The notes beneath the pieces were generated by a model. It did not search any database. It was given only the letters and a program-made list of their open reading frames with translations, and was not told where the DNA came from. The translations under genes and the position numbers were made by a program. Of a stretch of 64,000 bases of DNA, positions 7,675 to 63,954 are shown in pieces. The stretch comes from Saccostrea echinata (taxonomy: Eukaryota), in NCBI RefSeq assembly GCF_033153115.1, contig NW_026889758.1, forward strand, positions 53,568,001 to 53,632,000. The letters are read 5' to 3'. The first letter of the stretch is position 1; the number at the start of each line of letters is the position of its first letter.

Positions 7675-10021
7675 GGTCGCACCACCAAAAAAAATTGTGC
7701 ATTCATGAAATATGGTGCCGTTTTCATTTTATGTATTTAGTAAGCATGGATTCGGAACCAAATACACATTAATATTTATTAGAAATATTTTGTTTATCTG
7801 TATATTATCCAACTGTTTGTGAAATGGGGAGGAGTGATAGAAGGTGATTTGGTTTTTATAAAATATTGGTAACTTTTATAAAAAGCGTTTGATGTCCAAT
7901 TTTCCAATGCTCATAGTAAAATAATAAAGTGTTCAAGTTATCGAGAACAAAAGTAAAATCCATCTACAAGGTTGGTCCCTTGACCCACAACTTTCAAAAT
8001 TAAAATTCTATTATGCAGCAGCTGCTTACATACAATAATTGTTATTAATTATACCCTCTATCAAATAATTTTTAACACCAAATTTTGATGGAACAATTTT
8101 TGAACATCACCTTTAGCGATTGTGAATTTGTTCTGTATCAAGATTGTTGTGATTGTAATGAGCACAAAAATAAATAACATGCAGTAAATTGAACACATTT
8201 CTAGAGATTTCTTATTTATTTTCAGAGGGGGTGTTGACTGTTACTGTAGCGTCACGAACGATTCCCAGCTGACACAGGTGAAGAGCATGTTGTTCACGTT
8301 GTATTTGTAGTTCTTCAACTTTCAGTCGTTTTTCCTCCATTTCTAATCTTTTTTTCTCAACAACCAGCCTCTCTTCCTCTGTTGCAACTAGTCTCAATGT
8401 TATGTCATCATTACAAGAATCTTTGAGCGTTTCTTTGCTGGCTCTACATGTACATCGGGAAGTCTTTTTTCTGTAAACAAAATTTATATTATACAATCAG
8501 AAATACGAAGTTCATGTAAACAAAATCGCGAAACTTTTTTTTTCGTAAAATATATTAAAACATTAATTTTGTTATTTTATCTCAATTTCAAAATTTACAT
8601 GGAGTATTATAAAATGGTGAATAAATGACATATTTGTTTTCTCTTCATGCTAAATAATTGTATGAAGAATTAATAAAACTACAAAATATCAGACAAAAAA
8701 TTATCACTCAAAGTTGCATACGACTTTCCTTATAGTGTAGAGCATACCCACCTCTGTAGAAAAAAAAATCAAACACTATGTATCCTCTCGTACCTTTGTA
8801 AGACATCTCACTTCAGTGCTATTTATTATTCACTATTTACAGGATTGGTGAAATAGACCAAGTAGTTTTAGGAACACCCCCCTTTCACCGGGAAGTCTAA
8901 TGAGTATCACCCTTAAACCTACCATTTACAGCATCTGTGCTCTTGCTTGGTGACGTTTCCCTGGCCGACTCTGTCTCTAAAACGTCAATGCCCCCCTCAA
9001 TTCCCGAAATTGAGGTTTCCCCGATGATACCTTCTATTTTCTCATCTATTGGTCTTAAGGCGGCCCCTGATGGCAAGGATCCTCCCCCTCTCTTTTTTTG
9101 CTCCCTCCTGTTTAGTGCCAACTTCTTTCTGCTTTCGCTGCTCAAGCAGGTCCACTTCTTTTTCATTTCTTCTCCGGACCTGATGTGATCTGTAGTATTT
9201 ACAGCATTTACCTTGGTGGCTATTTTGTTCCATGTTTCCTTCTTCAAAGAATTGGAAACTGTTGAATTTTGCCTGGAAAATAGAATGTCTTTTCCTTTCT
9301 CCACTTCATCTGTTAACACAGTTATCTCAGCAGAGCTAAAATTTGGGCATCTTTTCAGAGACATTTTCTTACTAGAATTTTTTCTGAGCGCACGGACTTC
9401 GTACCCGTTTTGTGGACACAGATGAATGCATTAGAATACCATTCATTTCGTGTATACAAGCGCAAATGGGGTGGTGGATCAAATTTAAAGTAAATTCATA
9501 TGAAATATTTAACAATTCAAATTAAACATAATTAACTTTTATTTTATCAACAAACACAAATACTTTTTGTCACACAATTTTCTCATTCGAATTAATTCAT
9601 ACATAATCATGGCACAATTAGCATTATTGACTCTGCTCCTACATCCCCCGCCCCACCAAAAATTTGAACATTGTACATGTATTTGGTACATTGAAATTTT
9701 ATTTTCGAGCGTTTAACTCCTTTACAATATTTAAGATACACTTTTTTAAAAACAAAATTAAGAAAAAAAATAACATATCAGTGATTTGATTGGAAGAAAA
9801 CTTAACATCGAGCAAGAATATTTTTATTTTAATTTTTTATACAATTTCCTATAAAATTGTAGCATGAGATATATCTTAAGACTTGTCTTAAGATTTCTAC
9901 TACTTAAGATAGTTTTGTGAAACAGCTGTGACAGATGTTATGATTGTCGTAAGTCAGATCTTAAGATTGTCTTAAGATCTGTCTTAGGACAAATCTTAAG
10001 ATAGTTTTGTGAAACGCGCCC
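6765..10021. mobile_element. Harbinger DNA transposon, right end present, left end missing
   Basis: Convergent transposase and Myb genes. The terminus ...CTTAAGATAGTTTTGTGAAACGCGCCC has subterminal CTTAAG repeats (9870-10021) and is followed by CAG, a CWG-type target. No matching left TIR was seen. Confidence 0.8.
8212..9364 (-). CDS. Myb/SANT-like DNA-binding protein, the second gene of the Harbinger element (spliced, possibly frameshifted)
   Basis: Exon 9364-~8923 reads KRCPNFSSAEITVL...W..IA..VNAV...RS.EE.KKKW (Myb_DNA-bind_5 pattern). The 3' exon ~8470-8212 encodes a coiled coil (EEERLVVEKKRLEMEEKRL). The exon phases do not join cleanly. Confidence 0.85.
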
Positions 10022-33966: not shown

Positions 33967-36015
33967 ATGATGAAAATGACAGACTACCTTAACATTTTCT
34001 ACACCATCATTGCACTGTTTGTTCCCATAGTGAATGCAACCAGCTGTGACACCTGCCAATCCACAAATGTTATAGACCTTTCGGGCTGCAATTTCCGCAG
34101 CTTATCCAAGGCAATTAACAAATCGTGCAGTGCCGCACGGAGTGCTCAAATTCTGAATTTGAACGGAAATTTTATAACAAACATTTCAAGTGGCGACTTG
34201 AAAATGGCGGATAGCACTAGCTATTTTTGGCAGCTCAGCAAACTTAATATAAGTAATAATTCAATTATTCATGTCGCCGAAGATGCTTTTTCGGCATTAC
34301 TCGTTCTTGAACATCTAGACCTTTCGTATAACAAGTTGAAAAAGTTAGCAAATGGAATTCTGCAAAATAAACCTGCTTTAAGAACTGTTGATTTCTCGTA
34401 CAATCAGATAGATTTTGTTGGAACAAACGTTTTTACAAAATACCACAATGCTCTTAAAGAGGTTTACCTTGCACATAACAAGCTTGTGTCCTTTGAACCT
34501 TGGCCATATATACCACCAACTTTGAGAAAATTTGATGTATCGTACAATGTCATCGTGAACTTTACCAACAGAATGAACTGGACATACAACTTGGAGGAAC
34601 CTTACCACGCAAGTGCAGATCTACGTCACAATCAGTTTACATTTTGGAACGATGGATTCTTTCAACAATACAATCCTAATAGTAAAGATTTTTACACCGA
34701 CTTTGTAACATATAATGTAGATCTGCGCGATAATCCGTGGTTCTGCGACTGTAAACTTCATAATTTTTCAAAGAGATACCAGAATTCATTCTTCAAACAC
34801 GCCGATTCAAATTTAATTGAAGTTAAATGCAATGGTCCACCAAAACTAAAAGGGAAATCTTTTGTAGAGGATGTTGACTTGAACGATTTGGTTTGTAATG
34901 TCACCAAGGACTGTCCACATAATTGTTTATGTCAAGACAAGCCAGATGACAATATGTTTCATGTAAATTGTAATAACGGAGGCCATACAAGTTTACCAAG
35001 TCAATTACCGGAAAACAGATATAAAAGACTGAAATTGGAAATGAATAATAATTATATCAACACATTATCTAGTAGGAACTATACATCTTATATCACCGAA
35101 CTCTCAATGTCTGGAAATGGACTGCAGGTGGTTGAAAGCGGAGCGATAGGAAATATGAAAGAACTGAAATATTTGAACTTGGAAAACAATAAATTGAAGA
35201 GCATTCCAGAAAACATTCAGTATCTAATTCGATTTGAAGAAACTGAACTAAGTCATAATCCTTTCAAATGCACATGTGATATGGTTTGGATGGCAGAATG
35301 GATTAATTTTGCTCCTGAAGACAATCCAAATCGTGATATCCAATGTACTTATGAAAATGACGACGTTTACAAGATTCGTGAAGTAACAGAAAGGTTACTC
35401 AACTGCACGTATGATGTTGCTATAGGTTTGACAATCGGCTTTGCAATTTTGCTTACATTAGTTATTGTTGCTGTTATCTGGGCCAAACGATGTCCTTATG
35501 AAACCAAAGTTATCTTATACAGGTTTTTTCGGTATCATCCGTGGGATAAGTATCGCGTAGACAGAGAATTAGTTGCAGAATATGACGCATATGTGTCATT
35601 TGATGACAATAATATACACATACGTCAGTGGGTGCTTAGAAAATTTGTGAAACGTCTTGAAGAGGAAAAACCCTGCTATAAGTTCTTTGTGCCTATCAGA
35701 AACCTGATCCCTGGGGAAGACAAAGCAGATGGCATCATAAACAATATGGAGAAAAGCAAAAGAGTAATTATCATTCTCTCGGACAAATATGACGAGAATG
35801 AGTGGTGCAAATTTGAGTGCCAAAGGGCAGAAATTTTGGAATTGAACAATGGACGAATCATCTTCATAAAATATCACCCTGAAGCAGACGATATGATAGA
35901 AAACGAACCGTGGAAGTCTCGAGTGAAAGGTCGGAAGGTTTTTTCTCCCGGAGAGAAGAAAAGCGAGCGCAGGTGGTTTTGGGGGAAAATTAAATATGAG
36001 TTACCTACTCGATAA
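33967..36015 (+). CDS. Toll-like receptor A (short, two-cysteine-cluster protostome-type; 682 aa)
   Basis: Signal peptide, LRRs, LRRCT (NPWFCDC), internal LRRNT (CPHNCLC), more LRRs, second LRRCT (NPFKCTC), TM (IGLTIGFAILLTLVIVAVIW) and TIR (YDAYVSF, RNLIPG, WCKFE, FW). The start is preceded by acceptor TTTTAG. Confidence 0.97.
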   Translation: MMKMTDYLNIFYTIIALFVPIVNATSCDTCQSTNVIDLSGCNFRSLSKAINKSCSAARSAQILNLNGNFITNISSGDLKMADSTSYFWQLSKLNISNNSIIHVAEDAFSALLVLEHLDLSYNKLKKLANGILQNKPALRTVDFSYNQIDFVGTNVFTKYHNALKEVYLAHNKLVSFEPWPYIPPTLRKFDVSYNVIVNFTNRMNWTYNLEEPYHASADLRHNQFTFWNDGFFQQYNPNSKDFYTDFVTYNVDLRDNPWFCDCKLHNFSKRYQNSFFKHADSNLIEVKCNGPPKLKGKSFVEDVDLNDLVCNVTKDCPHNCLCQDKPDDNMFHVNCNNGGHTSLPSQLPENRYKRLKLEMNNNYINTLSSRNYTSYITELSMSGNGLQVVESGAIGNMKELKYLNLENNKLKSIPENIQYLIRFEETELSHNPFKCTCDMVWMAEWINFAPEDNPNRDIQCTYENDDVYKIREVTERLLNCTYDVAIGLTIGFAILLTLVIVAVIWAKRCPYETKVILYRFFRYHPWDKYRVDRELVAEYDAYVSFDDNNIHIRQWVLRKFVKRLEEEKPCYKFFVPIRNLIPGEDKADGIINNMEKSKRVIIILSDKYDENEWCKFECQRAEILELNNGRIIFIKYHPEADDMIENEPWKSRVKGRKVFSPGEKKSERRWFWGKIKYELPTR

Positions 36016-44065: not shown

Positions 44066-44325
44066 TATTTACATTCTCCAATTTTGTCTCTTCATAATTG
44101 TTTAATCTTTAATATGAATTAAGCAGTTCGATGCAATTCTTCTACTAAAAATGCAGTGGAAATGTAGATTCTTAAAGACTTCATTTTTACAGACTTATAG
44201 CATATGATGCTATACAGATTTATAGTTACATTACAAAACACTGTAAATGTATTGATTGCAGAAGTGAAATTCACACTAAATGGTGAAATCTAGAATGTAC
44301 TATTATCTATTTTTAGATTTTGAAA

Positions 44326-46365
44326 ATGGCAAACTGCCTTAACATAGTTTACATCATCCTTACGTCGTTTGTTTCGATAATGGCTGCAAACCACTGTGAC
44401 CCTTGCCAGTCCACAAATTCCATAGACCTGTCGGACTGCAATATCCACAGCCTGTCAGAAGCAATTAACAAATCTTGTAGTGCTGCACGAAGTGCTCAAA
44501 GTCTGAATTTGAAAGGAAATTTTACAACAAACATTTCAAGCAACGACTTTAAAATGCAGGATAACACTGGGTATTTCTGGCGGCTCAGCAAACTTAATTT
44601 AAGTAACAATTCAATCGTTTATGTCGCCGAAGACGCATTCTTGATCTTGCTCGTTCTTGAACATCTAGATCTCTCGAATAACAACATTAAAGAGTTAGAA
44701 AATGGAATTCTTCAAAATAAACCTGCTTTAAGGATTGTTGATTTCTCTTACAATCAGATAAATTTTATTGGATCTCACGTTTTTACAAAATACCACATCG
44801 CTCTAAAAGAGGTTCACCTTGCACATAACAAACTTGTCTCCATTGAACCGTGGCCATATATACCACCAATTTTGAGGAAATTTGATGTATCATACAACCT
44901 CATCGTGAACTTTACCAACAGAATGAACTGGACATACAACTTAGAGGAACCTTACCACGCAAGTGCAGATCTACGTCACAATCAGTTTACATTTTGGAAT
45001 GATGGATTCTTGCAACAATACAATCCTAATAGTGAAGACTTTTACATCGACATTGTAACATATAACGTGGACCTTCGGGATAATCCGTGGTTCTGTGACT
45101 GTAAGCTCCATGAAGTTTTAAGGAGATACCAGAATTCATTAATTAAATACGCTTATTCAAATATGATTGAAGTTAAATGCAACGGTCCACCAGAACTAAA
45201 AGGGAAATCTTTTGTGGAAGATGTTGATTTGAACGATTTAATTTGTAATGTCACCAAGGACTGTCCACAGAATTGTTTATGCCAAGACAAGCCGGATGAT
45301 AATATGTTTCATGTAAATTGTGATAATGGAGACCACACAAGTTTACCAAGTCAATTGCCTGAGATCGGAAACAAAAATCTGAAATTGGAAATGAATAATA
45401 ATCATATCAAGACATTATCTAGTAGGAATTATACATCTCATATCACCGAACTCTCTCTTTCCGGAAATGGACTTCAGGTAGTTGAAGTTGAAGCAATAGA
45501 GAACATGAAGGACCAGGTGCATTTGAACCTGGAAAACAATAATTTGCAAAGCATTCCAGATAACATTCAGTTTAAAACTCCATATGAAAAAGTCGAATTA
45601 AGTAAAAATCCTTTCAAGTGCACATGCGACATGGTTTGGATGGCAGAATGGATTAATTTGGCCCCTGAGGACAATCCAAATCGTGATATTCAATGTACTT
45701 ACAAGAAAGATGACTTTTACAAGATTCGTGAAGTGACAGAAAGGTTGCTCGACTGCGCGTATGATGTTGCTATAGGGTTTACAATAGGCTTCGCCATTTT
45801 ACTTACACTCGTAATTGTTGCTGTTGTGTGGGCCAAACGGTGCCCGTATGAAACGAAAGTTATCTTATTTAGGTTTTTTCGGTATCACCCGTGGGACAAA
45901 TACCGCGTGGACAGAGAATTAGTTGCAGAGTATGACGCGTACGTATCGTTTGATGACACTAATATTCACATACGCCAGTGGGTGCTTAAAAAATTTGTGA
46001 AACGTCTTGAAGAGGAAAAACCCTGCTATAAGTTTTTTGTGCCTATCAGAAACCTTATTGCTGGGGAAGACAAAGCAGATGGTATCATAAACAATATGGA
46101 GAAAAGCAAAAGAGTTATTATCATTCTGTCGGACAAATATGACGAGAATGAGTGGTGCAAATTTGAGTGCCAGCGTGCAGAAATTTTGGAATTGAACAAT
46201 GGACGAGTCATCTTCATAAGATATCACCCTGAAGCAGGCGATATGATAGAAAACGAACCGTGGAAATCTCGAGTGAAAGGCCGGAAGGTGTTTTCTCCAG
46301 GAGAGAAGAAAAGTGAACGAAGATGGTTCTGGGGGAAAATTAAATATGAGTTACCTACTCAATAA
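44326..46365 (+). CDS. Toll-like receptor B, tandem paralogue of TLR A (679 aa from the ATG at 44326)
   Basis: Same architecture as TLR A, colinear throughout. The TIR is nearly identical but the BB loop reads RNLIAG. The ORF track starts at TTG 44320; the first ATG after acceptor TTTTAG is at 44326. Confidence 0.97.
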   Translation: MANCLNIVYIILTSFVSIMAANHCDPCQSTNSIDLSDCNIHSLSEAINKSCSAARSAQSLNLKGNFTTNISSNDFKMQDNTGYFWRLSKLNLSNNSIVYVAEDAFLILLVLEHLDLSNNNIKELENGILQNKPALRIVDFSYNQINFIGSHVFTKYHIALKEVHLAHNKLVSIEPWPYIPPILRKFDVSYNLIVNFTNRMNWTYNLEEPYHASADLRHNQFTFWNDGFLQQYNPNSEDFYIDIVTYNVDLRDNPWFCDCKLHEVLRRYQNSLIKYAYSNMIEVKCNGPPELKGKSFVEDVDLNDLICNVTKDCPQNCLCQDKPDDNMFHVNCDNGDHTSLPSQLPEIGNKNLKLEMNNNHIKTLSSRNYTSHITELSLSGNGLQVVEVEAIENMKDQVHLNLENNNLQSIPDNIQFKTPYEKVELSKNPFKCTCDMVWMAEWINLAPEDNPNRDIQCTYKKDDFYKIREVTERLLDCAYDVAIGFTIGFAILLTLVIVAVVWAKRCPYETKVILFRFFRYHPWDKYRVDRELVAEYDAYVSFDDTNIHIRQWVLKKFVKRLEEEKPCYKFFVPIRNLIAGEDKADGIINNMEKSKRVIIILSDKYDENEWCKFECQRAEILELNNGRVIFIRYHPEAGDMIENEPWKSRVKGRKVFSPGEKKSERRWFWGKIKYELPTQ

Positions 46366-50499: not shown

Positions 50500-50575
<76 letters not shown>
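50321..50575. repeat. Two (AT)n microsatellites just downstream of the ARM-TIR-SAM stop codon
   Basis: (TA)n runs at ~50321-50386 and ~50501-50575. Confidence 0.95.
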
Positions 50576-50642: not shown

Positions 50643-53600
50643 TTAATGAATCAATCGATTAATGTCTGGGTATTCTGCTTGCAGTTTCTCTATAGCATCA
50701 CTGAATTTCATCAAATCTTCAAGACTTTTCATTCCTAGCTTTTCTTCAATGCATCTATAGAAATACTCAGGGGCCTGTGAGAATGATATAATTTTGGTAA
50801 AATATGATAAGAAATTAGATTACTATAAACAACAACAACCAAAAAAATAAATAAATAAATAAATAAAAGTTATAGAATCATTTTTTAAAAAATTTTATTA
50901 TTTATTTTTTCGAAATTAAATAAAATAGTCATAATCTTCATTAAAATAATTTCCTTAGAATATTTTTTTTAACTAAAGATAACTCTTCCAAGTTTTAGAT
51001 ATAGAAGGTATTGATGAGCATGTAATGTATCTAGAATTTCTAAAGCGCACACAAAAATCACATCTTATCATTTTCTGATTATCAAATGCCCTAAATGGAT
51101 ATCAACTTACCCTTCGGAATAGCTTGTAAAGAAATACAAGTTGTTTGCCAGATAGATTTTTCAATCCAGAAAATCTGCAAGGAAAAGTAAAAGAAAGATC
51201 ATGTTTCATTTTCTCTCTCTCTCTCTCTCTCTCTCATAAAGATGTAAATTTTCAGCCGCTTCATATCGCAGTTAACAAAGTTACTTCACTCATAAGTATT
51301 TTCTATAAAGATATCAAATGTTATCATTCAAAAATGCATTTCACTTCATATCGCCTCAGTATTTGATTTTCTTTTTTTTTTCTAGTAATCTCGAATGACT
51401 TACGCTGTTAATTGATTGTCATTAAGCCATTTCTCAATATCTTTTCTCGTCCAATCCATTAAGACAACGCTGTCGTCAGATGCAGGCATCAGGCTCGGAA
51501 CAGCATTCTAAAATATTGATAATTTGATATTTAAAGTTATTTAAAAATGTTTATATCAATAAAATTACGTGAGAAAGTGTATTCAATTTGTTTACATTAT
51601 TTTCAATATGGATGTACCAAGAGGGCATTCAGTTATCATACAGTAATCTATACTAATACCTTGAAAGAAAAGAATAAGATATACACTAAAATTCATGCAT
51701 TTTCTTACAATATATAAGTAAACTAGAGGCACTGTGAGCACTGAGCTCAGAAAATGATATCCCTGCTTCCATATGAGTATAATGGTAAAGTCCATATTTT
51801 GCTAATGAAAGCCCGAATATGTGTCCAATCAAAAAGAGAAATAGGAGGCCACAATGGCACTAGGTAATAAATTCTGCGGAAGTTTCATTAAATTTTAGTT
51901 AGTGATATCAATAAAGTTGCGGATAAGAGACGAGTATCCCCAATATTATGGAAAGAATGGCAGTGTCCATGTTTTGCTATTTGAAGCCTAAAAAAGTGTC
52001 CATCAAAAAGTTAAATAGGGAAGTACAATGGCACTATTTACCGGTAATAAATATCCTGTGAAAGTCTCATTAAATTCAATTCAGTGGTATAGGAGGAGTA
52101 CGGATAAGAGAAGGATACCCCAAAGCATAATTAAAGGACGGACGTAGAGACAGACAGACGGACGGACCCCCTCTCCCACTTTTCAAAGGGGGTGTATAAT
52201 GACGGAAACAGACCTCAGGAATGGCTGACAATGCCTTGGTCTTCTGTGGAAAAATTTTCCCAGTCAATGCGGTATAAAGTTCTCCAAATTTTCTGTCAAA
52301 ATCGTACTTTCCGCTAAAATCGTAAAACAGTTTAGCTCCTATCATGGCACCCAGCCATCCAGTTGCTTTGTAACCTCTCTCCATCAAAAGCGGAATAATT
52401 TCTTTCTTTTGTGAGTAAGCATATTCTGCCTCTGTCAAAGAATTTTCCGTTAATGTTTAATAAAAGTTTTATCATTCAGAACAATCAACCTACTTTATCA
52501 ACAAGAACAGACAACAATATCATTCGCAAAATTTTATGTTAGAGCTCTGTAAAATGAAAAGTATTAAGTTATTGATATTTTACAGTTTGCTGATTTTTTA
52601 AGTAGCAATGAAAGTATTAAAAGAAACAAGGCAGCAATTTTCAAAGGTACAAAAGTTTATAATTAATTACTTCAAACTATAGTAATGCCAGTTCCTAACA
52701 TCTCTACAACTTTGACATGAATTTTCAATAACATCTTCTTCTAACTGATGTTAAACCATGTTAAATTATGCGATATTCTTACCAGTTCGACAATTTTGAC
52801 TATCTTTGTACTTCTCAGAGTAGCACACTAGTATAATTCTAGCTTCTTCCACTGCTCGAGCCATGGCCTCTAGGATGGAACCTTCCATGTTGTCAACGTC
52901 CATCCAAACCGTGAAGCCTTTCTCTTGAAGACGATCCCTGATCTTAAAAATACATTCAACTAAATCACTGAGTGCTGCACGGAAAACTTAGTCACGTGAT
53001 AAATCACGTGATAAATTTTTGCTGTGTTAAAAGGGGGAGATACTGTTTAACTGATATCTGCTCTGTTAAGTGAACCTATTTTCAGATTTTAATTTTTAAT
53101 CAAGATCAGGTCAAAAAAAAAAAGAGAGAGAAAAAAAGACTTTTAAAAATAGTATTATACTAATACTACTTTGAATATCAAAAACTTAATTTTTTAATAC
53201 CTGTAAAAGAATTTTCTGGTTTGCCCAATTGTAGCTTAGCATGATATGTCCTGCAATAGCAGATTCTTCTGCTTTTTCTTCTACTTTTTCCTTTTTCTTT
53301 TTAGCTATAAATAATAAAAACATCAACATGCACATATAGATGACTTTTGAAATATTACAATTAGATACTTGTGGTTGATGACTTTTGTTAAAATTTATTA
53401 CATAGAAGATTTTGTATGAACAAGTAGATTTTGTAACATGCATACCTTTGTCTTGCCCCTCATTTATAACAAAACAAGCTCCCTGGGCTGCCTTTGATAA
53501 CTCTTCATTGTCGCTATTGTAAAGGTTTTGAAGTGTTTTCCAAACTTCTTTATCATTCTGAAATTTTATGCCAATTTTACCCTGAGTTTAACCTGTGTTT

Positions 53601-54301
53601 ACTTGCAAGTAAATGAATGGTACGACAACTCTGGATAGAGCTTTTATAAAATGCAAAGTAGCTCATTTTTCCCATAGAAGATATAGAAGAAGTAATGATA
53701 GATTTCTTCTTAACAAGGATTTTAATGGAAAGTCTTGTTACCCACCTTAAATAGTTCTTTATTCTTTTTTGCAAAAGACAACTCCCAAATGACGTTGACA
53801 ACTGCAATCTGTTCTGCTACATTTCCTTGTTTTAAAATTCGTTTTAGGGTCTGAAAGGCACCCTTTTTCATAATGGTTGTTTTGTTCTCATCATTTTTAG
53901 CCAATTTTGCCAAACCATTAATGAGCTCATGGATAGAAAATCCCCACTGCCTGCGATCGTTTGCTTTTTCAGCCTTGTGTACCATGTCAAGTAGGAAATC
54001 AAAAATGGATTCATCGGCAGTGATTTTTCTGTTTTGTTCCTCATTGACCATGTACGACAATGCCAACAAGACAACGAGCTTAACATCTGTTACAGAAAAG
54101 AAAGTCATCAAAGACAAAGGAGTTATTCATAAATATTATAGACCCAGCGTAATGGAGGTATTCTTTTTCAAAATGTAATTTCTCTGATCTTTTTTTGGAA
54201 TCACATCCTTAGTATATTAAAGCGATTTTCTGAAGTAATTGTTTAATGTATTTCCTTATATTCTTTACTTTTTTAAATACATTATCTTTGTTTTCCAAGA
54301 A

Positions 54302-54357
<56 letters not shown>

Positions 54358-57300
54358 GCACAATAAAAAAGAATAGAAAAAAATTACGCAAAACATTATT
54401 CAGTAGAAAATTGTAGTAGGATGATTTAAATATTGTACTACCCACATGTTATATCTGTTTTCAACAGCTCTTGTAATATTTCTACCATATTGACATCCTT
54501 TGACTCATGTTCGTCCTTCTTAGACAAACGCTTGATACTGTAAACATCTTTTGTAGCAGCATTACGAGCACAGTTATTGAGTATTCCAAGAGTGGAGTTA
54601 AATGGAAAGTGGTTTTCATTCTGAAAACATAAGAAAAGTTAAATTATCAGAGGACGAATTCCTTCCTAATCTGCATTTGTAAAAGGGGGAGGGTTGTTTG
54701 AAACTTATTGTAATCATTTTTATGATATTTCTTTGTGAAAAGGACAAAGTAATTTTTAATCCTTGAATTATAACAGCCAAAATGCCAACAGATTTAGAAC
54801 CTCTAAAAAGGATCAACATGTACGTATAAGAAAGTCCTATTGGCCTGTTTTCTCAATTACGTACCATACAGCAATAAACAATTTAACGTTCTCTTATTAT
54901 CCGTATAAGAATGCTTGTATTTTTACAAGCTGAAACTTTTCACCTTGAGAGTATTTAAAAAAAAAATTCGTATTCATTTCAATGTAAAACTTTGGACCTT
55001 TTTTGTGGTCCCATTCACTGTTTGACTGAGTTGAAATCTACATAAGATGTGGAAGCTACACATCATTTACAAACTAAGCATGGTTGTTGAAGAGAAAATT
55101 TTCATACAAATTTTGAAATATTGTTGTGACATTTTTACCCCAATGGCAACATTTGAACAATATGAAATTTACATTGCATAAGGATGATTGCGTATCAATT
55201 TCATAATTGGAAGTTTTTATATTTTTAATATTTTTCATATATTTCAGAGTAACTGGCTCCATCCCTGCTTCTAGCTCGAGGCTTATAATTTGATAAATTT
55301 TAACCTATACTACTACATGTATGTTTAATCTGAAAATGTTAAAACTTGCATTAGAAGGGGGCTTTAAAAGATTTTTTATGCTTTAAAGTAACACTATTTT
55401 TTATCGTTGTTTTAAGATCATTTTCCGAAAAAAATTGAATTATCATTACATGTATATAAGATTGTTAAATTTTGTCATTTCAATCCTCGTGATTCCAAAG
55501 AGGATTTAAAGAGGGTTTTCTTAAATGATGCCACTCTTTTTTCTCGATTTCTTCATTATCTCATTCGTAAATTACATGTTGCTGGTTCTTTACTTGATAA
55601 GCATGTGTATGTCTTCCCGATATCCAAAGATGTATTCAGTTACCAATGGTTGAAATGGTCCACGAATTAATTGGAAGATCTAGAGGTCTAAAATGTTTAA
55701 ATGTTTAATTACGAAGACACACAACGGTGAACAAAAACAGCAACAGGTCACCTGAGTGACCCAGATGTCTCTATAAAGATTCAGACACTTAACTCTTGGA
55801 ACTGAATTCAAATGTTTTTCCCCTTAATATTTACCGTAATTTCGTCCTCCAGTTCTTCCAGGTCCTGTTTCACAGCTAATAAATCTTCAGTCAGATATTG
55901 AAAGAACTGTGTGTCATTAACAATAGATTCGGCAAATTTGGGACTCCCATCAGCATAATTCCATAAAATTGTCCTGATTAGTGCTAAAAGCTTGAAAAAT
56001 TCTGATTCCGATTCCTCCTCTTCAAGGTCATCGTCAAACCATTCGAGATCATGATTAGACCAGACAGCCTGGTATACGTCCACTAAATGAGGGACGAACC
56101 TAAAGCAAACAAAGGTTCAGTTGCATTTTTTTTTGTTACCGGTATGCTATGATTTTAATGTAGCAAGTTGTGTAATACTTGCAAATATTAATTTTCAATT
56201 TGCATGCAACAGGTAACACAGGACCGAGGTTGAATAGACAAGGTGCTCAATGGTTAAGATATGATGATAAACTTGTAAAATTGTATATCACTGCTGATAT
56301 CAAATTTGACATCATAATTAAGGTTAAAAATTGCAAAAATGGTTGAAATTGTTCGCAGTGAGAAAAAAATCATGGTTAACTGTTTCTAGTATGTCGCATA
56401 CTGTAGAATCGTCATTGTTCGTTGGGGAAGAGTGTTCGGGGATTGGCTGGGTCACCTTTACCCAAAAATTTATATCTCATATCACGAACGATTATTTTGT
56501 CAAAGTATTGATTCATTGAGTTACCAACAACATTTTGTTCCCAGTAAAATTTTTTTTGCCCTAAACATTGACTCTCACTAATTAAAAATAATTCCACAGT
56601 ATGCTTAGCTACATACTCGTAAAACTTACCCATTTTTGGCCAAGTAGTTTCCCATCACCAGTCTCTGCTCCAGGTCTTGGTGGTCTTGAAATGGATCGTC
56701 TACTTTTTTATCAAGTAGTTCATATATTTTCGGGTACATCTCCTCCGTGATTTTATTCATGTTTTGAAGCTGTAGATAAACAACTGATTTGATTGTAGAC
56801 CTGTTATATGTATTAATTAATCAGACCCATTTATTTAACCATTTATTAAATCAGAAAGCATGTATTATAATGGATGTGTAAACGTCATTTGACTTTTATA
56901 ATAATTGCATCTTTTTATAGACAATCTGCCAACACCCCTTCTTTGGTCCGATCCTGAGGCACAACCCAATTCACAGAAAAATGAGGCTATAATGATTCTA
57001 TACTATATGAAAATGTTTAATTTGGGCAAAATTTATATCTATCAATATTTAGTATTCATGAGATCATTTGTTTGCATCTGGAATTTTTTTTAAAGAATTA
57101 AGTTTTAAATAAACTTCAATGCTGTTATTTGTCATCTATAAAACTGTCTTTCTAGTTGATCCATTTAGAGGATGTGGCTAGAACTGCATTCGTATACAAT
57201 CGGGAAAAAATGTCAATAAACAAAAATAATCATTCCTTCCGCTTTAAAATATAATCCGTAGCATTCCAATACACAATATTCTAGTAAAGGAAAAGATAGG

Positions 57301-58365
57301 CTAAGACCCCTTTTTGGCCCCCGGTTTTGGGTGTCTTTTAGAATGATGCAGCAGTTTCTCAATAAAAACCTGTTCTCACCCCGTCACAAAAAGAGTATTG
57401 GTTTTAAGTTATGGGATACACAGAGGTCACAGGAAGGTCAGAAAATATGTCAATTTCCGAAATTCCTCATTTTTTATGTAAATTTTCATCTATTTTACAT
57501 TACATTTTGTTTCAGAAAACATAGAGCACAAGCTTGCCTATCAAACAAATTTATATATTTCATACACTAGCATCAGATGCATCTTATGTATAAAAATCTC
57601 AGATAGGCAAGCTTGTGCTCTATCTTTCCCGTAGGGAAAAGTATCTCAATTCGACGAAATTTCACCAGAATTGAGGAAATTCAGGAAAACTTCCTACTTC
57701 TGCACCCTCCTGTGGCCTTCTTGTAAGCTTTGAATCAAAATTAGTGCTGGTTTTAAAACAAGCATCATTTTAAGTTCTTAACTACAAACTATCACAATTT
57801 TAACTGTGTTCTGATTTTACATCAAAGAAGGGACCAGATTCGGCCGTTTCCATACCTTGTCATTTCACATCGAAATACTAAGTATTATATAACTACATGT
57901 TAGGAAGGAAAATTATCAGATTACCTTTTTCAGGGCTTGATCAAATTCTTTTAGTGTTGGTTTCAGTTCACTGTGCCTCACTAACAGCATATCATATGCT
58001 TCTCCTTCTACAATGGACTTCGTTCTTACGGGTCTCCTCTTTCCAGACATGGTTGACGAATGTGAAGTGGATAAATGATCTGAAGAGAAATATATGTATT
58101 TTCATTCAAAATATATATTTATTTTTTCTTTTAAAATGTTTTTAAATCCATAATAAACTACTTTAATAAGAGCAGAAATAGTTTCCAGTCTTACTCTTTT
58201 ATGGACCTGCTTCTTTCATAAGTCATTTGAGCAAAAGTTTTCTAGTTCACCTTTTCTAGTTTTTTCTTTGTGGATACTTGTGTCAACGAGACTTTCGATA
58301 GGTGCGTCCTTGGTCTCCCTCGGGCTGACTTTAGGGGCTTCTTCAGAACTACATCCTGATCCCAT
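50643..58365 (-). CDS. ARM-repeat / TIR (TIR_2-type) / SAM-like protein, ~694 aa, 13 coding exons
   Basis: Exons 58365-58251, 58079-57925, 56769-56630, 56099-55835, 54620-54446, 54086-53746, 53557-53446, 53304-53201, 52942-52783, 52431-52214, 51507-51404, 51174-51111 and 50774-50643. All introns are GT-AG and in phase (2085 nt). ARM-like segments: ILWNYAD, LGILNNCA, LAKLAKNDENK, VIWELSF. TIR: IMLSYNW..VWMDV..MEGSILEAMARAVE..YSEKYKDSQNCRTEAEYA..IIPL. SAM-like: DWTRKDIEKWL..LSGKQL..L..KLGM...F.DAIEKL. Confidence 0.9.
51720..52200 (-). mobile_element. HINE/pearl-like element in an intron of the ARM-TIR-SAM gene
   Basis: AACTAGAGG end, two ~175-bp units, GACA/GACG microsatellite and a terminal stem CCC..TTT.AAAGGGGG. 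Confidence 0.6.
54311..54355. repeat. (CT)n microsatellite, intronic
   Basis: Perfect CT run. Confidence 0.95.
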
Positions 58366-59535
58366 CCTCCATCATTATATGTCGTCTGCTAAGGAAAATT
58401 ATAACTGCATGAAGGATAATATCTTTTATTGTTTCTCAGGACATGATTGCTACTTTGTCGATGGGGTTTAAATTGATTATTTTCTCTTAACACTTTGAAA
58501 TACTTTAAATGAATTGCATATCAATGTATCTAACTGAGATCCCTTAATTTTCCAATATGTAGAACTAAATTCATTTGAGGAGAATCAATCTGCCTCTCTG
58601 CAACATATTCATTTCAAACAATGGCAATATGCATGTATTTGGCTGTTCGCATCCACATTCTATTTTATTAGTAGTTTTTGCGTACTATATATGAAATCAG
58701 TTTGTAAGTATACATTGTGAGCAGAAATTTTTACCTTTACAATGTATTTAATTCATAGTATATACACTCAGGTTAACCTGCAACATGATTGTCAAGCTGT
58801 AATGAACTTTAAATCTATCGATTTTTTAAATACCCCCAACTTGTGTCTTCAATATGCCCTATCTAGATTATCTATCAAGCGGGCTTTATTCAGTTGTAAT
58901 AAACAACAATTATTTATGTCGACTTGAATAAGAAAATGTCATTAGGATCTTGAAAAGAAGTATTGAACTTACTCGAAAATCAATAAACTAATTTGCAACT
59001 AATTTAAACAATCAACAACTTTTTAATGCATCAAATTAAAGGAAGTCCCAGTCTACCGTGGTAATATTATAAATTCACAATGCAAGTGATTTTAGAGAAA
59101 TAAGTTCAGGACCACAGCAAAAATGTATACTAATCCAAATAAATTTAGAATTAAGCCTAATATCGGGCGTTTTAGAGTGATAGAAAAAGAACAGTTGCAT
59201 TTAACATTAACCCAAATCAAAGAATGATACAGAATGTTACAACATTACCTGTTTGTTTTATGTCTGCGATTTATGTATAACACAACGATCGGAATTTAAC
59301 TTCCGGGGTAACAAATAACTGTCAGTCGATGTCCCTAGTGCACGACGTTGTTTCTTTACTGCGGAATCAATATCTTTAAATGTTCAACAACGGTCTGTTT
59401 GTCACCCATTAGATTCACCAATGTTATGCTGAAATTCTTTATTATCAGTTAGTGGTTGATTAAACTATTAAACTAAAGCAAGATTTATGCATGCTGGTCC
59501 ATCCAGTCAAGTACTTGCCTTAAGATAGCTGTACA

Positions 59536-61290: not shown

Positions 61291-63954
61291 ATGGGTGGAA
61301 ACAGCAGTAAACCCGAGGATAAATCATCTCTTCCAAAACAGGTATGGCTTTTAGTCTTCTATATCCTGACCATTCCAATGGCATCTTAATCAATTCCCTG
61401 AACAGCTGCTAATAAATATTTTATCAGCATAACAACTGCCTGAATTATTGTGAAACGCAATATTTTGTAGTCAAAGTCACAATAAGAATATGTTTCAGGA
61501 CAGAAATCGAAACAGAGAAAGTGATGGGAACACGGCAAGAACAAGCCAGATTAACCCCCATACGATACATAGACGTGGGGTAAAACCACTGCCCCCAACG
61601 ACAGCACGAAAAGAAATCTTCAACAAAGATTTGCTTAGGGAGGCAACCAAAAATGCTAATCAACAGGTTAGTACAATACAGTTGTATGAATAATACTACA
61701 AGTAATTTATTTCAAGGAGTTTATCAAGAAAAAAACACGTTTTGTTTTGGCATTAGTATTGTATTTATAAATTGATAAATTTAAAATGTTTGAACAGTTT
61801 GAAGGTTTGTTGAACTTTTTAAAAATATCAAAACTTTTGTCCGAATTTTATTTATATTATTACTACAGCTGAACGGATATTTCTTTAGTCAATAAACTGA
61901 GAAACGTTTGTAAAAGTAGGTTTCTTCAAAAGAACTGGGGTCTTACCAATCCCTTGCAGTAAATCTTACCAAAGGACTAAAGCATGATTTGGAGAAAGCA
62001 TGGTCTTTTTACCTCTGGGTTGTGAATTTAGATCTCAATAGCCAGGACTTTTCTAAAGGTGGAGCCAAAAACACACCAAAAGGAGATCTTAAGGACGTTA
62101 ACTGTGGGAAATCTCATATTGCAGACTTTTTCACAACTTTATGCAGGTGCAGTGTGCAAATATTCCTTAACATAGAACACTCCGTTGGTATATTTTACAC
62201 CAAGTAATAGATGTACTTGATTACATAATTCGAACCTGATAATGATGAAGCCATTACAAAAATTCATTTCAAGCTAATGTTTGTTTTAGTTATGGTGATT
62301 TGAAGTGTGTAACAATTGAAGGACTTAAAAAAGAAGACAACTTTGAAATTGGATGGACAGAGAAAAAACTAGTCAAAGGGAAATGGAACGCCGTGTTCGT
62401 TAAAGAAGAATGGAGAGTTGTTCAGCTGGAATTTGGAATTTCAACTAATTCAAAGGTTTAAGAAATATAAGAAAAAAATCATTTAGAAAACTTGTGGTAT
62501 TTGTTTGAAATATGTCGAATCTTAATTTGATTTTTAAATTTGCAGTTGTAAGTTTCGTTTATTTTCTTTCAGTGGAAATCTTTATATTTTTTCATTGATC
62601 CCGAAGACTTAATACACTGGTGTCATCCTAATGAACAGGAATGGCAGTTGCTATCTACGCCGGTGACAAAACATGATTTTCTCTCTATGCCAAACTGTAG
62701 ACGAAAATGTTTCGAAATGGGGGTCAAAATCGTTCAACCTACACTTGGAAAATTAAAAGTGGATCAGGGTAGAATAAGTGTGGAAGTGTTTATCGACAAA
62801 ACACATTCACAGAACACTGTTCTAAATTATACATTAAATAGCAAAAAGGCAAAGAATGGAAACCTGGAATCGAACACACCGAGAAGCATAGGAGATACAA
62901 CTGCAAGAACTGATGCAGAGCTGACACAAAAACGTTCTACAGAGAAGGATGAAAACCGAAATATAGAACATATGAGTAAATCAGAGACTGAACAAAATGA
63001 TAGCTCAAATTCGCAGTCTCCACCAGATCTTAGGAAATACGTATTTATGAGTCGTGCTGACTCGCGAGTAGTGTTTGACCTGGACTTTCCAGTTCCAGGG
63101 ACATATGTCCTTGACATCGAAGGGCGAACTTTAGGTGAGAAAGGAGGTCACAACACCGAGTCTGTACTATGTCAATTCAAGTTTTCTTGTAATAAATGTT
63201 CCTCACACGATGAGCGTTTCCCATTACCAGATACTCCTGAAATCGGATGGGGACCGACACCTCACTGTATGAGATATGGTGTCAGACCTGCATCTCATGG
63301 ATATGGACATATTTACATCTTACCTAGAGAAACTGTGAAAATTCGATTTGATTACACGGGGAAATACGAGTTTAAGACACATATTATTAGTATGAACTCT
63401 TCGATTAACACAGAAAAAATGGCTACATGCAGGATATCTCCCAATAAACTCACAGTTGAGGTTAATGTACCCGATGAAGGACACTATGCCCTGAAGCTAT
63501 TTGCCAAAAAGGAGGTCGATAGTGACTTTATCAATGTTATAAACTACATGCTTATATTTGACCAGAAAAATGCCGAGGTACTGATTAATTTTCTTTATTT
63601 ATGTGTGATTTACACTTATAGATCAGTTTTAAAGTTTCATTATGAATAGTTTTGAATACTCATTTCTTTCTTTAAACGAAACAATGTGCAATGGTCACAC
63701 AAAACGATACATTACAGTATCTCAAATTTTAAAAAAAGTCTTGCTAGTATTGTAAAATATACATGTTTTTTTTGTCTTTAATCATCAGAAGTATGATAAG
63801 CGAATGATGCGCGAACGATTATCTAAAGCAACAGAAAATGGAACGGAGCAGGAAGTAGAGGAAGCGTTGAAGAATTTCGAATTTTACAGAGTCCCTGACC
63901 AAGGGGAAATACAAAAGGCAAAGCGGAAGCTGAAATATTTTGAGTCTAGAAGAG
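61291..63954 (+). CDS. KY/hillarin-like transglutaminase-fold protein (5' part; continues beyond the window)
   Basis: Exons 61291-61341, 61499-61666, 61920-62146 (weak acceptor), 62290-62455, 62573-63577 and 63789-63954 join in phase. Motifs LT....DLEKAWSFYLWV, TPKG.L, FF..LCSY.DLKCVTIEG, WNAVFV..EWRVVQ, YFFIDPEDLI...HP....WQLL..PVT...F..MP, then KY-type repeats (FP.PG.Y.L.I; VP.EG.YALKLFAK). Confidence 0.85.

What the first reader, a model, noticed from the sequence alone, without database searches (positions are those of the whole stretch)
50643..58365. Lipid-anchored ARM-TIR-SAM protein: a domain-permuted SARM1-like candidate NADase
Seen: 13 exons splice into an intact ~694-aa protein. It starts MGSGCSS, with in-frame TAA-TGA just upstream fixing the start. 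ARM-like repeats follow, then a TIR_2-type domain with NCRTEAEYA, then a C-terminal SAM-like domain. Established: MGxxxS is the N-myristoylation consensus and a nearby Cys is a typical palmitoylation site. SARM1 (ARM-SAM-SAM-TIR) uses ARM autoinhibition, SAM oligomerisation and a TIR helix-C glutamate (E642) to cleave NAD+. ARM-TIR proteins have been noted in invertebrate TIR surveys but I know of no functional characterisation. Inference: the same three modules in a different order, targeted by acylation rather than a mitochondrial signal, could be an independent membrane-bound NAD+-cleaving immune executioner or second-messenger generator.
Basis: partly seen in the sequence, partly recalled or inferred. 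Interest (0 to 1): 0.8.

Follow-up and report, generated by a model that had tools for sequence, protein, structure and literature searches.

The report
Oyster lipid-anchored ARM-TIR-SAM gene
This is a real, expressed oyster gene for a probably membrane-anchored protein with armadillo repeats, a TIR domain that keeps its catalytic glutamate, and a SAM domain. It belongs to an old, already catalogued but functionally unknown ARM-TIR family, so the proposed NAD-cleaving role is plausible but unproven.

Summary
On the minus strand, 13 GT-AG exons (58365..50643) give 2085 nt, or 694 aa. Every exon peptide matches RefSeq 'uncharacterized protein LOC133183961 [Saccostrea echinata]'. Spliced contigs from four runs in two studies confirm introns 1-8. 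A 2158-nt contig has the length expected for the whole model.

ARM repeats, a TIR_2 domain and a divergent C-terminal SAM are all supported. E523 sits at the catalytic position and is conserved in 91% of aligned relatives. An N-terminal MG..[ST] acylation motif is the family consensus.

- The family (ARM-TIR) is already listed in mollusc surveys. A 2026 preprint places it in a TIR cluster that reaches from green algae to gar.
- That preprint tested four isolated TIRs of the cluster in E. coli and scored none active. Sister clusters, one from an oyster, made cADPR or depleted NAD+.
- Neither the ARM nor the TIR is specifically SARM1-like, so this is an independent assembly and not a permuted SARM1.
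- Two out-of-frame upstream ATGs overlap the start codon.

The scan's index holds only this same stretch; nothing was found on other DNA. Verdict: a new member of a known kind, of moderate interest.

The parts
50643..58388 (-). Whole transcribed unit seen here: 13 coding exons plus 23 nt of 5'UTR inside exon 1. At least one more 5'UTR exon lies further upstream.
58251..58388 (-). Exon 1. Acceptor AG at 58390-58389, 23 nt of 5'UTR, ATG at 58365, residues 1-38 (MGSGCSSEEAPK...), disordered in the model.
   Evidence: X1 contig ends at 58388; X4 record 21 carries 133 further letters that do not lie in 58389-58879
58372..58377 (-). In-frame TAA TGA upstream of the ATG, inside exon 1, so they are present in the mRNA.
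58349..58375 (-). Overlapping out-of-frame uORF ATGATGGAGGATGGGATCAGGATGTAG (MMEDGIRM*). Its two ATGs lie 10 and 7 nt before the main ATG.
   Evidence: read from the sequence
58345..58365 (-). Codons 1-7, MGSGCSS. Gly2 with Ser6 fits the N-myristoylation pattern, and Cys5 is a candidate palmitoylation site.
57925..58079 (-). Exon 2 (residues 39-90). It holds M49 (the next in-frame Met), the basic patch SGKRRPVRTK, and the start of the helical region.
53285..57996 (-). Armadillo-repeat region, residues 67-441 (exons 2-8, introns included).
52253..53248 (-). TIR_2 domain, residues 454-582 (end of exon 8, exon 9, exon 10).
52430..52783 (-). Codon of E523, the candidate catalytic Glu. It is split by the phase-1 intron 9: G at 52783, AG at 52431-52430. 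Paralogous TIR loci in the genome break at the same residue.
50649..51465 (-). Divergent SAM domain, residues 610-693 (exons 11-13), a five-helix bundle with a short APEYFY insertion.
50643..50645 (-). Stop codon TAA.
57280..57880 (.). Multi-copy interspersed repeat inside intron 2; not part of the protein.
   Evidence: tables 2, 3 and 8: high summed depth, many short contigs 90-95% alike

Best explanation
SHOWN. The locus is the single-copy gene LOC133183961 of the rock oyster Saccostrea echinata. It has 13 coding exons, is spliced and expressed, and encodes a 694-aa protein with no signal peptide or transmembrane helix. The protein has five parts in order: MGSGCSS at the N-terminus; about 60 disordered residues with a basic patch; about eight armadillo repeats (67-441); a TIR_2 domain (454-582) that keeps the helix-C glutamate E523 within the family motif NCRxEAEYA; and, after a flexible linker, a divergent SAM domain (610-693). 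It belongs to an ancient ARM-TIR(-SAM) family found in molluscs, a brachiopod, corals, an echinoderm and tunicates. According to a 2026 survey the family also occurs in lancelet, gar and green algae.

INFERRED (most likely mechanism). Gly2 is myristoylated co-translationally and Cys5 is palmitoylated, which holds the protein on the cytosolic face of a membrane. The ARM solenoid acts as the ligand- or partner-binding part and keeps the TIR quiet. When ARM is engaged, the SAM domains and the TIR BB-loops bring TIRs together into the composite active site. E523 then cleaves NAD+, more probably producing cADPR or ADPR as a signal than fully depleting NAD+.

My odds: gene model and domain architecture 0.95; N-terminal acylation of this oyster protein 0.7; TIR catalytically active in vivo 0.5; the whole chain as written 0.3-0.35. 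The confidence figure given for this explanation (0.4) weighs the shown identity together with the inferred mechanism.
For: Gene model. Identity to the RefSeq protein. Single copy and no intronless copy in the genome, so the spliced contigs come from RNA. ARM: (Arm 32 of 73 members, ARM_ARMC5 44 of 73). TIR_2: (71 of 73). SAM: SAM_1/2/3 hits in family members; the family C-terminal HMM's top 4 of 1039 pieces are real SAM exons; hhalign 92.5%; 62 of 73 relatives keep the domain. Glu: E in 71 of 78 aligned rows, C520, R521 and Y526 equally conserved; E523 equals Lingula E511, listed as the catalytic-position GLU in Table S2 of bioRxiv 10.64898/2026.04.20.719644; HMMER aligns SQNCRTE with SDWCWDE of the NAD-cleaving CRISPR TIR Cat1. 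The family includes green algae, which have no TLR pathway, so a TLR-adaptor role cannot be ancestral. Related TIR clusters with the same HIMxSY / VWMD / xC+xE..YA / WLG motifs were active in E. coli and Glu-dependent: M. gigas A0A8W8J0Z4 made cADPR, Clupea made cADPR, and Latimeria (Asn at -4, as here) depleted NAD+. Acylation: the family consensus begins MGxxxS; 40 of 89 rows fit the pattern against 20 of 1536 internal Met, and 18 of the 40 have Cys at residues 3-7.
Against: Four isolated TIR domains of the same TIR cluster (Chlamydomonas, Branchiostoma, Lepisosteus, Phallusia; all xCRTE[AS]EY) have a blank 'Active' column in the E. coli screen: no cADPR isomers and no NAD+ depletion. The screen also left the known NADases RUN1, RPS4 and RPP1 blank, and its constructs lacked the SAM, so this is only weak negative evidence. 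The Trp four residues before the Glu in SARM1 and in plant and bacterial TIRs is Asn here (62 of 78 rows). Two out-of-frame ATGs with good context lie 10 and 7 nt before the start, and their uORF overlaps it. Crassostrea orthologues carry an in-frame upstream ATG (MYTRWR-MGS), and two related gene models start at the M49 equivalent. Non-acylated forms are therefore possible. ARM autoinhibition and SAM oligomerisation rest only on analogy and on pTM values (0.76 full length, 0.57 for TIR+SAM).
Confidence: 0.4

Rival explanations
1. It is a non-enzymatic, membrane-anchored TIR scaffold. In this view it is a sorting or bridging adaptor, or a negative regulator, for Toll-like receptor/MyD88 signalling, working like vertebrate TRAM. 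The ARM repeats would be a docking platform and the SAM would serve for clustering.
For: TRAM is an N-myristoylated TIR adaptor whose lipid anchor and polybasic region are needed for TLR4 signalling (Rowe 2006, as cited in PMC3369926). This protein also has a basic patch after the anchor. Two TLR genes lie 4-17 kb away in the same window. The four tested TIRs of this cluster were inactive. The best structural neighbours include the adaptor or receptor TIRs Hydra TRR-2, TIRAP and MyD88.
Against: The catalytic-position Glu and its surrounding motif are kept in about 91% of relatives, including green algae without TLRs. By my own knowledge (not tested here), the vertebrate adaptors MyD88, Mal, TRAM and TRIF lack this Glu. 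TRAM itself is a weaker structural match (Z 12.4 against 17.7). No TLR was found in the sampled flanks of eight paralogous loci (partial coverage).
Confidence: 0.3
2. The TIR is an enzyme, but not a SARM1-style NAD+ depleter. It could make a different small signal (a cADPR isomer, or a base-exchange or ADPR-derived nucleotide), or it could act on nucleic acids as some plant TIRs do. An unknown downstream receptor would read the signal.
For: Most active animal TIRs in the 2026 screen made cADPR without depleting NAD+. The family replaces the usual Trp at -4 with Asn, a position lining the substrate pocket in SARM1, AbTir and plant TIRs (my own knowledge). A product outside the three isomers measured would explain the blank rows.
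Against: No product is known for any member and no candidate receptor was seen in the window. Latimeria, with Asn at -4, simply depleted NAD+.
Confidence: 0.15
3. The lipid anchor is not used in vivo. The overlapping uORF, or initiation at M49, yields mainly a soluble protein lacking the first 48 residues, and the MG motif is not functional in this species.
For: The two upstream ATGs and the uORF overlap the start. The S. cucullata and C. angulata gene models begin at the M49 equivalent, and Crassostrea transcripts have an in-frame upstream ATG.
Against: The main ATG has A at -3 and G at +4. Exon 1 is joined to exon 2 in contigs of three runs (X1-X3) and is present in a contig of the fourth. 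The MG..[ST] start is the consensus of a family spanning several phyla, which is hard to explain if it is unused.
Confidence: 0.2

Closest known systems
Invertebrate 'ARM-TIR' proteins. Listed for Crassostrea gigas (Zhang et al. 2015, PMC4346834) and Aplysia (11 genes, PMC9334734). Equivalent to TIR cluster A0A0B7AZE4_1 of Hurieva et al. 2026 (bioRxiv 10.64898/2026.04.20.719644). Probably one of the ecTIR-DC families of Gerdol et al. 2017 (paper not held).
   Same: N-terminal ARM/TPR-clan repeats followed by a TIR_2-type TIR with Glu at the catalytic position and the xCRTEAEY motif. Lingula A0A1S3J5V8 (P0036) and Pocillopora A0A3M6T9G3 (P0179) are both relatives found here and listed members of that cluster.
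   Different: Nothing places it outside the family. What the papers I could read do not mention is the conserved N-terminal acylation motif and the C-terminal SAM domain.
SARM1 / dSarm / TIR-1
   Same: The same three domain classes (ARM, SAM, TIR), a Glu on helix C, no transmembrane segment, and full-length SARM1 as the top Foldseek hit for the whole model (E=2.4e-6).
   Different: The order is ARM-TIR-SAM with one SAM, against ARM-SAM-SAM-TIR. It has an acylation motif where SARM1 has a mitochondrial targeting sequence (that SARM1 feature is from my own knowledge). The TM-score to full-length SARM1 is only about 0.19. The ARM is beta-catenin-like and the TIR is 18-19% identical, tying with non-SARM TIRs. 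SARM1 sits in a different TIR cluster (T1J6E6_2) in the 2026 survey. Asn replaces Trp at -4.
TRAM (TICAM2)
   Same: A cytosolic TIR protein held on membranes by N-myristoylation plus a nearby basic stretch.
   Different: By my own knowledge TRAM has no ARM, no SAM and no catalytic Glu. It is a weaker structural match (Z 12.4) and no sequence relationship was detected.
Amphioxus TIR-SAM model Brafl1_131196 (Zhang et al. 2008, PMC2575513)
   Same: The TIR-then-SAM order in a deuterostome, backed by cDNA. Lancelet members of this TIR cluster exist.
   Different: I could not check whether that model also has ARM repeats or is an orthologue.
M. gigas A0A8W8J0Z4 (639 aa, TIR cluster K1QUY0_1)
   Same: An oyster protein of similar length with the TIR at 369-497. 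It shares the motifs HxMISY, VWMD, CRxEAxYA and GWL, and its TIR made cADPR in E. coli in a Glu-dependent way.
   Different: It is a separate TIR cluster, below the survey's 40% clustering threshold. Its domains outside the TIR were not checked here.

Membership tests
ARM-TIR family (TIR cluster A0A0B7AZE4_1) | Armadillo/TPR-clan helical repeats N-terminal to the TIR | tested here: met
   Family profile against Vac8 2.6e-34 and beta-catenin 1e-22. Pfam Arm in 32 and ARM_ARMC5 in 44 of 73 members. Model residues 73-431 against beta-catenin and designed ARM proteins, Z about 18.
ARM-TIR family (TIR cluster A0A0B7AZE4_1) | TIR_2-type TIR domain | tested here: met
   PF13676 E=4.7e-23, 82 bits against a cutoff of 28. 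71 of 73 relatives match.
ARM-TIR family (TIR cluster A0A0B7AZE4_1) | Glu at the catalytic helix-C position within xCRTEAEY | tested here: met
   E523 lies in NCRTEAEYA. The column is E in 71 of 78 rows. It aligns to Lingula E511, which is 'GLU 511' in Table S2.
ARM-TIR family (TIR cluster A0A0B7AZE4_1) | About 40% or more TIR identity to listed cluster members (the survey's clustering rule) | tested here: met
   Residues 446-694 are 44% identical to Lingula P0036 and 41% to Pocillopora P0048 in alignment A2. This is MAFFT identity, not the survey's MMseqs2 procedure.
SARM1 family | Domain order ARM-SAM-SAM-TIR | tested here: not met
   The model and the Pfam/hhalign results give ARM 67-441, TIR 454-582 and a single SAM 610-693.
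SARM1 family | TIR specifically related to SARM1 TIRs | tested here: not met
   SARM1 TIR scores Z 16.3 at 18% identity and ties with Hydra TRR-2 (17.7), TIRAP (16.3) and MyD88 (15.7). phmmer against the PDB does not reach SARM1 at E<=1. SARM1 is in a different cluster in the 2026 survey.
SARM1 family | Catalytic Glu equivalent to E642 | tested here: met
   Motif and profile alignment. No residue-level superposition was available.
SARM1 family | NAD+/NMN allosteric pocket in the ARM domain and an octameric SAM ring | not testable with these tools
   No coordinates or PAE are accessible and multimers cannot be predicted. The ARM is nearer to beta-catenin than to SARM1 ARM.
SARM1 family | NAD+ glycohydrolase activity | not tested
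   This needs a bench assay. Four TIRs of this cluster were inactive in E. coli, and sister clusters were active.
SAM domain superfamily | A five-helix bundle of about 65-70 residues recognisable by SAM profiles | tested here: met
   hhalign against ten own-genome SAM_1 exons: probability 92.5%, E=4.8e-7, 71 columns. SAM_3 in 9, SAM_1 in 4 and SAM_2 in 4 of 73 relatives, best E=5.7e-5. Five helices with pLDDT above 90. P0155 itself is below Pfam thresholds, and no fold search of the SAM alone was possible.
N-myristoylated / dually acylated proteins | M-G-{EDRKHPFYW}-x-x-[STAGCN]-{P} at the true N-terminus, with Cys nearby for palmitate | tested here: met
   MGSGCSS fits, with in-frame stops upstream inside exon 1. 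40 of 89 relatives fit against 1.3% of internal Met. The lipid attachment itself was not tested.
TRAM-like sorting adaptors | Orthology to TICAM2, with a TIR that lacks the catalytic Glu | tested here: not met
   The Glu is conserved. The TRAM TIR scores Z 12.4, well below the best matches.

The most novel reading that the evidence does not exclude
ARM-TIR-SAM proteins are an ancient, SARM1-independent class of lipid-anchored TIR enzymes conserved from green algae to fish. In this reading they sit on membranes through myristate and palmitate, are gated by a peptide- or ligand-binding ARM solenoid, are clustered by a C-terminal SAM, and release a NAD+-derived second messenger. That would be a membrane-proximal immune or stress signalling system in animals, parallel to plant and bacterial TIR signalling. 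The isolated TIRs would have scored inactive in E. coli only because the SAM and the activating input were missing.
Probability: 0.25. Interest if true: 0.8.

Novelty: new member of a known kind. Interest (0 to 1): 0.45.

Why it matters
Outside SARM1, and perhaps oyster TIR-STING, no animal TIR enzyme has a known cellular role. A 2026 screen suggests that catalytic TIRs are widespread in animals. This family is large (hundreds of members), old, and keeps its active-site motif, yet its isolated TIRs were silent in that screen.

This work adds three observations: the native proteins carry a conserved membrane anchor, a conserved SAM clustering module, and a probable ARM sensor. Together these give a concrete reason for that silence and a clear construct design for re-testing (full length, ARM-deleted, TIR-SAM, E523Q, G2A, C5S).

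If the protein is active, it would tie NAD+-derived signalling to membranes in invertebrate immunity. If it is not, the family would be a case of a conserved 'catalytic' Glu used for something else.

Tried and rejected
- Exon-by-exon Pfam found the TIR and a weak ARM but no SAM. The SAM is split over three short exons.
- P0155 alone does not reach any Pfam SAM model, even at E<=10.
- The protein-atlas look-up of residues 603-694 gave a SAM_3 cluster at only 0.77, which is a lead and not evidence.
- phmmer of P0155 against the PDB reached Cat1 and ARMC4 but not SARM1.
- The profile search against the PDB was filled by ARM proteins, so TIR and SAM hits were not visible.
- Both fold searches of the TIR+SAM model were filled by TIR matches, so the SAM fold was never searched on its own.
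- Rejected: 'circular permutation or orthology with SARM1'. See the membership test.
- Rejected: 'the spliced contigs come from a retrocopy'. The genome search shows only the exon-by-exon locus.
- General ARM-TIR/TLR linkage: tblastn of the window's TLR against 16 sampled 10-kb pieces around eight paralogous loci found nothing.
- Gerdol et al. 2017, the ecTIR-DC classification, is not held.
- A words search of the scan's earlier findings returned nothing.

Full report
**How the spliced model was handled**

The exons were searched one by one (Pfam on ten stop-free exon pieces; exon 6 alone in the large HMMER search).

That search and the word search that followed returned a database protein, P0155. 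This is NCBI 'uncharacterized protein LOC133183961 [Saccostrea echinata]', 694 aa. A script then checked each exon peptide separately against P0155 and checked the six split codons one codon at a time. No joined sequence was printed or sent.

All full-length work used P0155 by its id. One unbroken part of P0155 (residues 446-694) was typed once as the first row of alignment A2.

**The observation**

The gene is on the minus strand. The only high-scoring frame-consistent GT-AG chain has 13 exons from 58365 to 50643 (coordinates under 'parts'). It sums to 2085 nt, which is 694 codons plus TAA.

All 13 exon peptides sit at the expected positions in P0155, and every intron is GT..AG. The start MGSGCSS is preceded by in-frame TAA TGA.

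Contigs of four public runs from two studies were laid on 52880-58879. They show joints at exactly introns 1-8. One 2158-nt contig at depth 46 covers all exons in that stretch. Its length equals 23 nt of 5'UTR plus the 2085-nt CDS plus 50 nt of 3'UTR.

The genome holds no intronless copy; all near-identical matches are exon by exon at this locus. The contigs are therefore mRNA.

Two refinements follow from the reads:
- Exon 1 starts at 58388 behind an acceptor, and one contig carries 133 more upstream letters that lie elsewhere. There is thus at least one separate 5'UTR exon. The TAA TGA lie inside exon 1, so they hold in the mRNA.
They rest on the RefSeq model, the contig length, and full-length Crassostrea transcripts (P0002, P0153).

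**Domains**

- *TIR.* PF13676 TIR_2 matches at E=4.7e-23 over residues 455-574.
- *ARM.* A profile of 89 relatives hits Vac8 (2.6e-34), ARMC4/ODAD2 and beta-catenin (1e-22). Pfam Arm or ARM_ARMC5 match 32 and 44 of 73 relatives.
- *Full-length model.* The AlphaFold model has mean pLDDT 85.6 and pTM 0.76. It shows a disordered stretch at 1-60, helical repeats at 67-441, an alpha/beta TIR at 454-582, a disordered linker at 587-605, and five helices at 610-693.
- *SAM.* The C-terminal domain is a divergent SAM. Family members reach SAM_1, SAM_2 or SAM_3 (best E=5.7e-5). An HMM of the family's C-terminus ranks real SAM_1 exons of the same genome as its top four among 1039 six-frame pieces. hhalign against an alignment of ten such exons gives probability 92.5%, E=4.8e-7, over 71 columns. 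62 of 73 relatives keep the domain.

I could not run a fold search on the SAM alone.

**The catalytic glutamate**

E523 is the first Glu of NCRTEAEYA, and intron 9 splits its codon. In the family alignment this column is Glu in 71 of 78 rows, and C520, R521 and Y526 are equally conserved.

E523 aligns with E511 of Lingula A0A1S3J5V8. The structure-based survey of Hurieva et al. 2026 lists that residue as the catalytic-position Glu. HMMER also aligns SQNCRTE with SDWCWDE of the NAD-cleaving CRISPR TIR Cat1.

One difference from SARM1 and from plant and bacterial TIRs stands out. The Trp four residues upstream is Asn here, in 62 of 78 rows.

**Is it SARM1-like?**

Only in its parts list.
- Foldseek ranks full-length SARM1 first for the whole model, but at TM about 0.19.
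- The ARM region matches ordinary beta-catenin and designed ARM proteins at Z about 18.
- The TIR ties with Hydra TRR-2 (Z 17.7), TIRAP and SARM1 (16.3) and MyD88 (15.7), at 14-18% identity.
- There is one SAM, placed after the TIR.
- The 2026 survey puts SARM1 in another TIR cluster.

This is an independent assembly of the three domain classes. It is neither a permuted SARM1 nor an orthologue.

**The family**

Exon 6 alone finds 370 proteins at E<=0.001. Named members come from:
- oysters, mussels, scallops, clams, abalone and whelk;
- the brachiopod Lingula;
- Pocillopora corals;
- the tunicate Clavelina;
- a brittle star.

All of them are annotated 'uncharacterized'.

'ARM-TIR' is an established class in mollusc immune-gene surveys of C. 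gigas (PMC4346834) and Aplysia (11 genes; PMC9334734). A TIR-SAM model with cDNA support was reported in amphioxus in 2008.

Two relatives found here, Lingula A0A1S3J5V8 and Pocillopora A0A3M6T9G3, are listed in TIR cluster A0A0B7AZE4_1 of the 2026 preprint. That cluster has an N-terminal 'TPR' clan region, has Glu present, and fills 595 rows. It also holds lancelet, gar, flatworm, rotifer and green-algal proteins.

Within the S. echinata genome the gene is single copy. At least eight paralogous TIR loci share the exon break at residue 522/523.

**Functional evidence from the literature**

The preprint expressed 154 isolated TIR domains in E. coli. The four from this cluster were Chlamydomonas, Branchiostoma, Lepisosteus and Phallusia, all with xCRTE[AS]EY. 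Their 'Active' column is blank.

Sister clusters with the same motif set were active in a Glu-dependent way:
- an M. gigas 639-aa protein made cADPR;
- herring made cADPR;
- coelacanth, which has Asn at -4 as here, depleted NAD+.

The known NADases RUN1, RPS4 and RPP1 were also blank in that screen, and the constructs lacked any SAM. The negative result is therefore weak. It is still the only direct data, and it lowers the odds of the NADase reading.

**The lipid anchor**

MGSGCSS fits the myristoylation pattern, with Cys5 available for palmitate.
- The family consensus begins MGxxxS.
- 40 of 89 diverse relatives fit the pattern at their N-terminus, against 20 of 1536 internal Met. 18 of the 40 have Cys at residues 3-7.
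- A basic patch (SGKRRPVRTK) follows in the disordered region.
- From memory, and not tested here, the motif resembles the SH4 motif of Lck.

Three caveats apply:
- The letters that give TAA TGA also hold two out-of-frame ATGs, at -10 and -7. These open an 8-codon uORF (MMEDGIRM*) that overlaps the start.
- Crassostrea transcripts carry an in-frame upstream ATG (MYTRWR-MGS).
- Two related gene models start at the M49 equivalent.

**Surroundings**

Two tandem single-exon TLR genes (33967-36015 and 44320-46365, + strand) end 4.3 kb from this gene's 3' end, in convergent orientation. This suits a TLR-adaptor reading.

However, TLRs are very numerous in oysters. No TLR was seen in the sampled flanks of eight paralogues (partial coverage).

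**Verdict**

The gene, its 13 exons, its expression and its ARM-TIR-SAM architecture with a conserved acylation motif and catalytic-position Glu are all real.

The gene is already annotated, though unnamed, and belongs to a catalogued but functionally unknown family. The membrane-bound NADase model is reasonable and testable. I put the TIR being enzymatic at about 0.5 and the full mechanism at about 0.3. The main rival is a non-enzymatic membrane scaffold, at about 0.3.

Novelty: new member of a known kind. Interest: 0.45.

Noticed in passing
window 58349-58375 (minus strand): An 8-codon out-of-frame uORF (MMEDGIRM*) has two ATGs, 10 and 7 nt before the main start, and overlaps it. It may throttle translation of the main protein or shift initiation to M49.
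   Followed up: partly
window 33967-36015 and 44320-46365 (+): Two tandem single-exon Toll-like receptor genes (LRR plus TIR, 682 and 681 aa). Their TIRs are near-identical.
   Followed up: partly
window 6733-7674 (+) and 8897-9364 (-): A PIF/Harbinger-type pair: a DDE_Tnp_4 transposase ORF (E=1.3e-37) and a Myb/SANT-like DNA-binding ORF (E=1.5e-18).
   Followed up: partly
window 57280-57880 (intron 2): A multi-copy interspersed repeat. Many short contigs at 90-95% identity pile up here in all four runs, with loose ends on both sides.
   Followed up: no
window 62648-63649 (+): An open frame of 333 aa matching the KY-like immunoglobulin-like domain (PF23265, E=2.2e-29), probably an exon of a neighbouring gene.
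   Followed up: no
G000: C62:2.29 Mb, C64:5.59 Mb, C34:1.16 Mb, C17:4.57 Mb, C14:20.78 Mb, C45:3.53 Mb, C9:11.88 and 14.85 Mb: At least eight paralogous TIR loci break their exons at the same place as intron 9 (inside or just before the catalytic Glu codon). This points to an old intron shared by the oyster ARM-TIR expansion.
   Followed up: partly
P0157 (Crassostrea angulata isoform X2, 491 aa): This annotated isoform reads through into the intron after the exon-9 equivalent. It stops before the catalytic Glu, and so lacks half of the TIR and the SAM. It may be an intron-retention product or a model artefact.
   Followed up: no
window 50505-50575, 51215-51235, 54300-54355: (AT)n and (CT)n microsatellites just 3' of the gene's stop codon (the AT run) and in its introns.
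   Followed up: no
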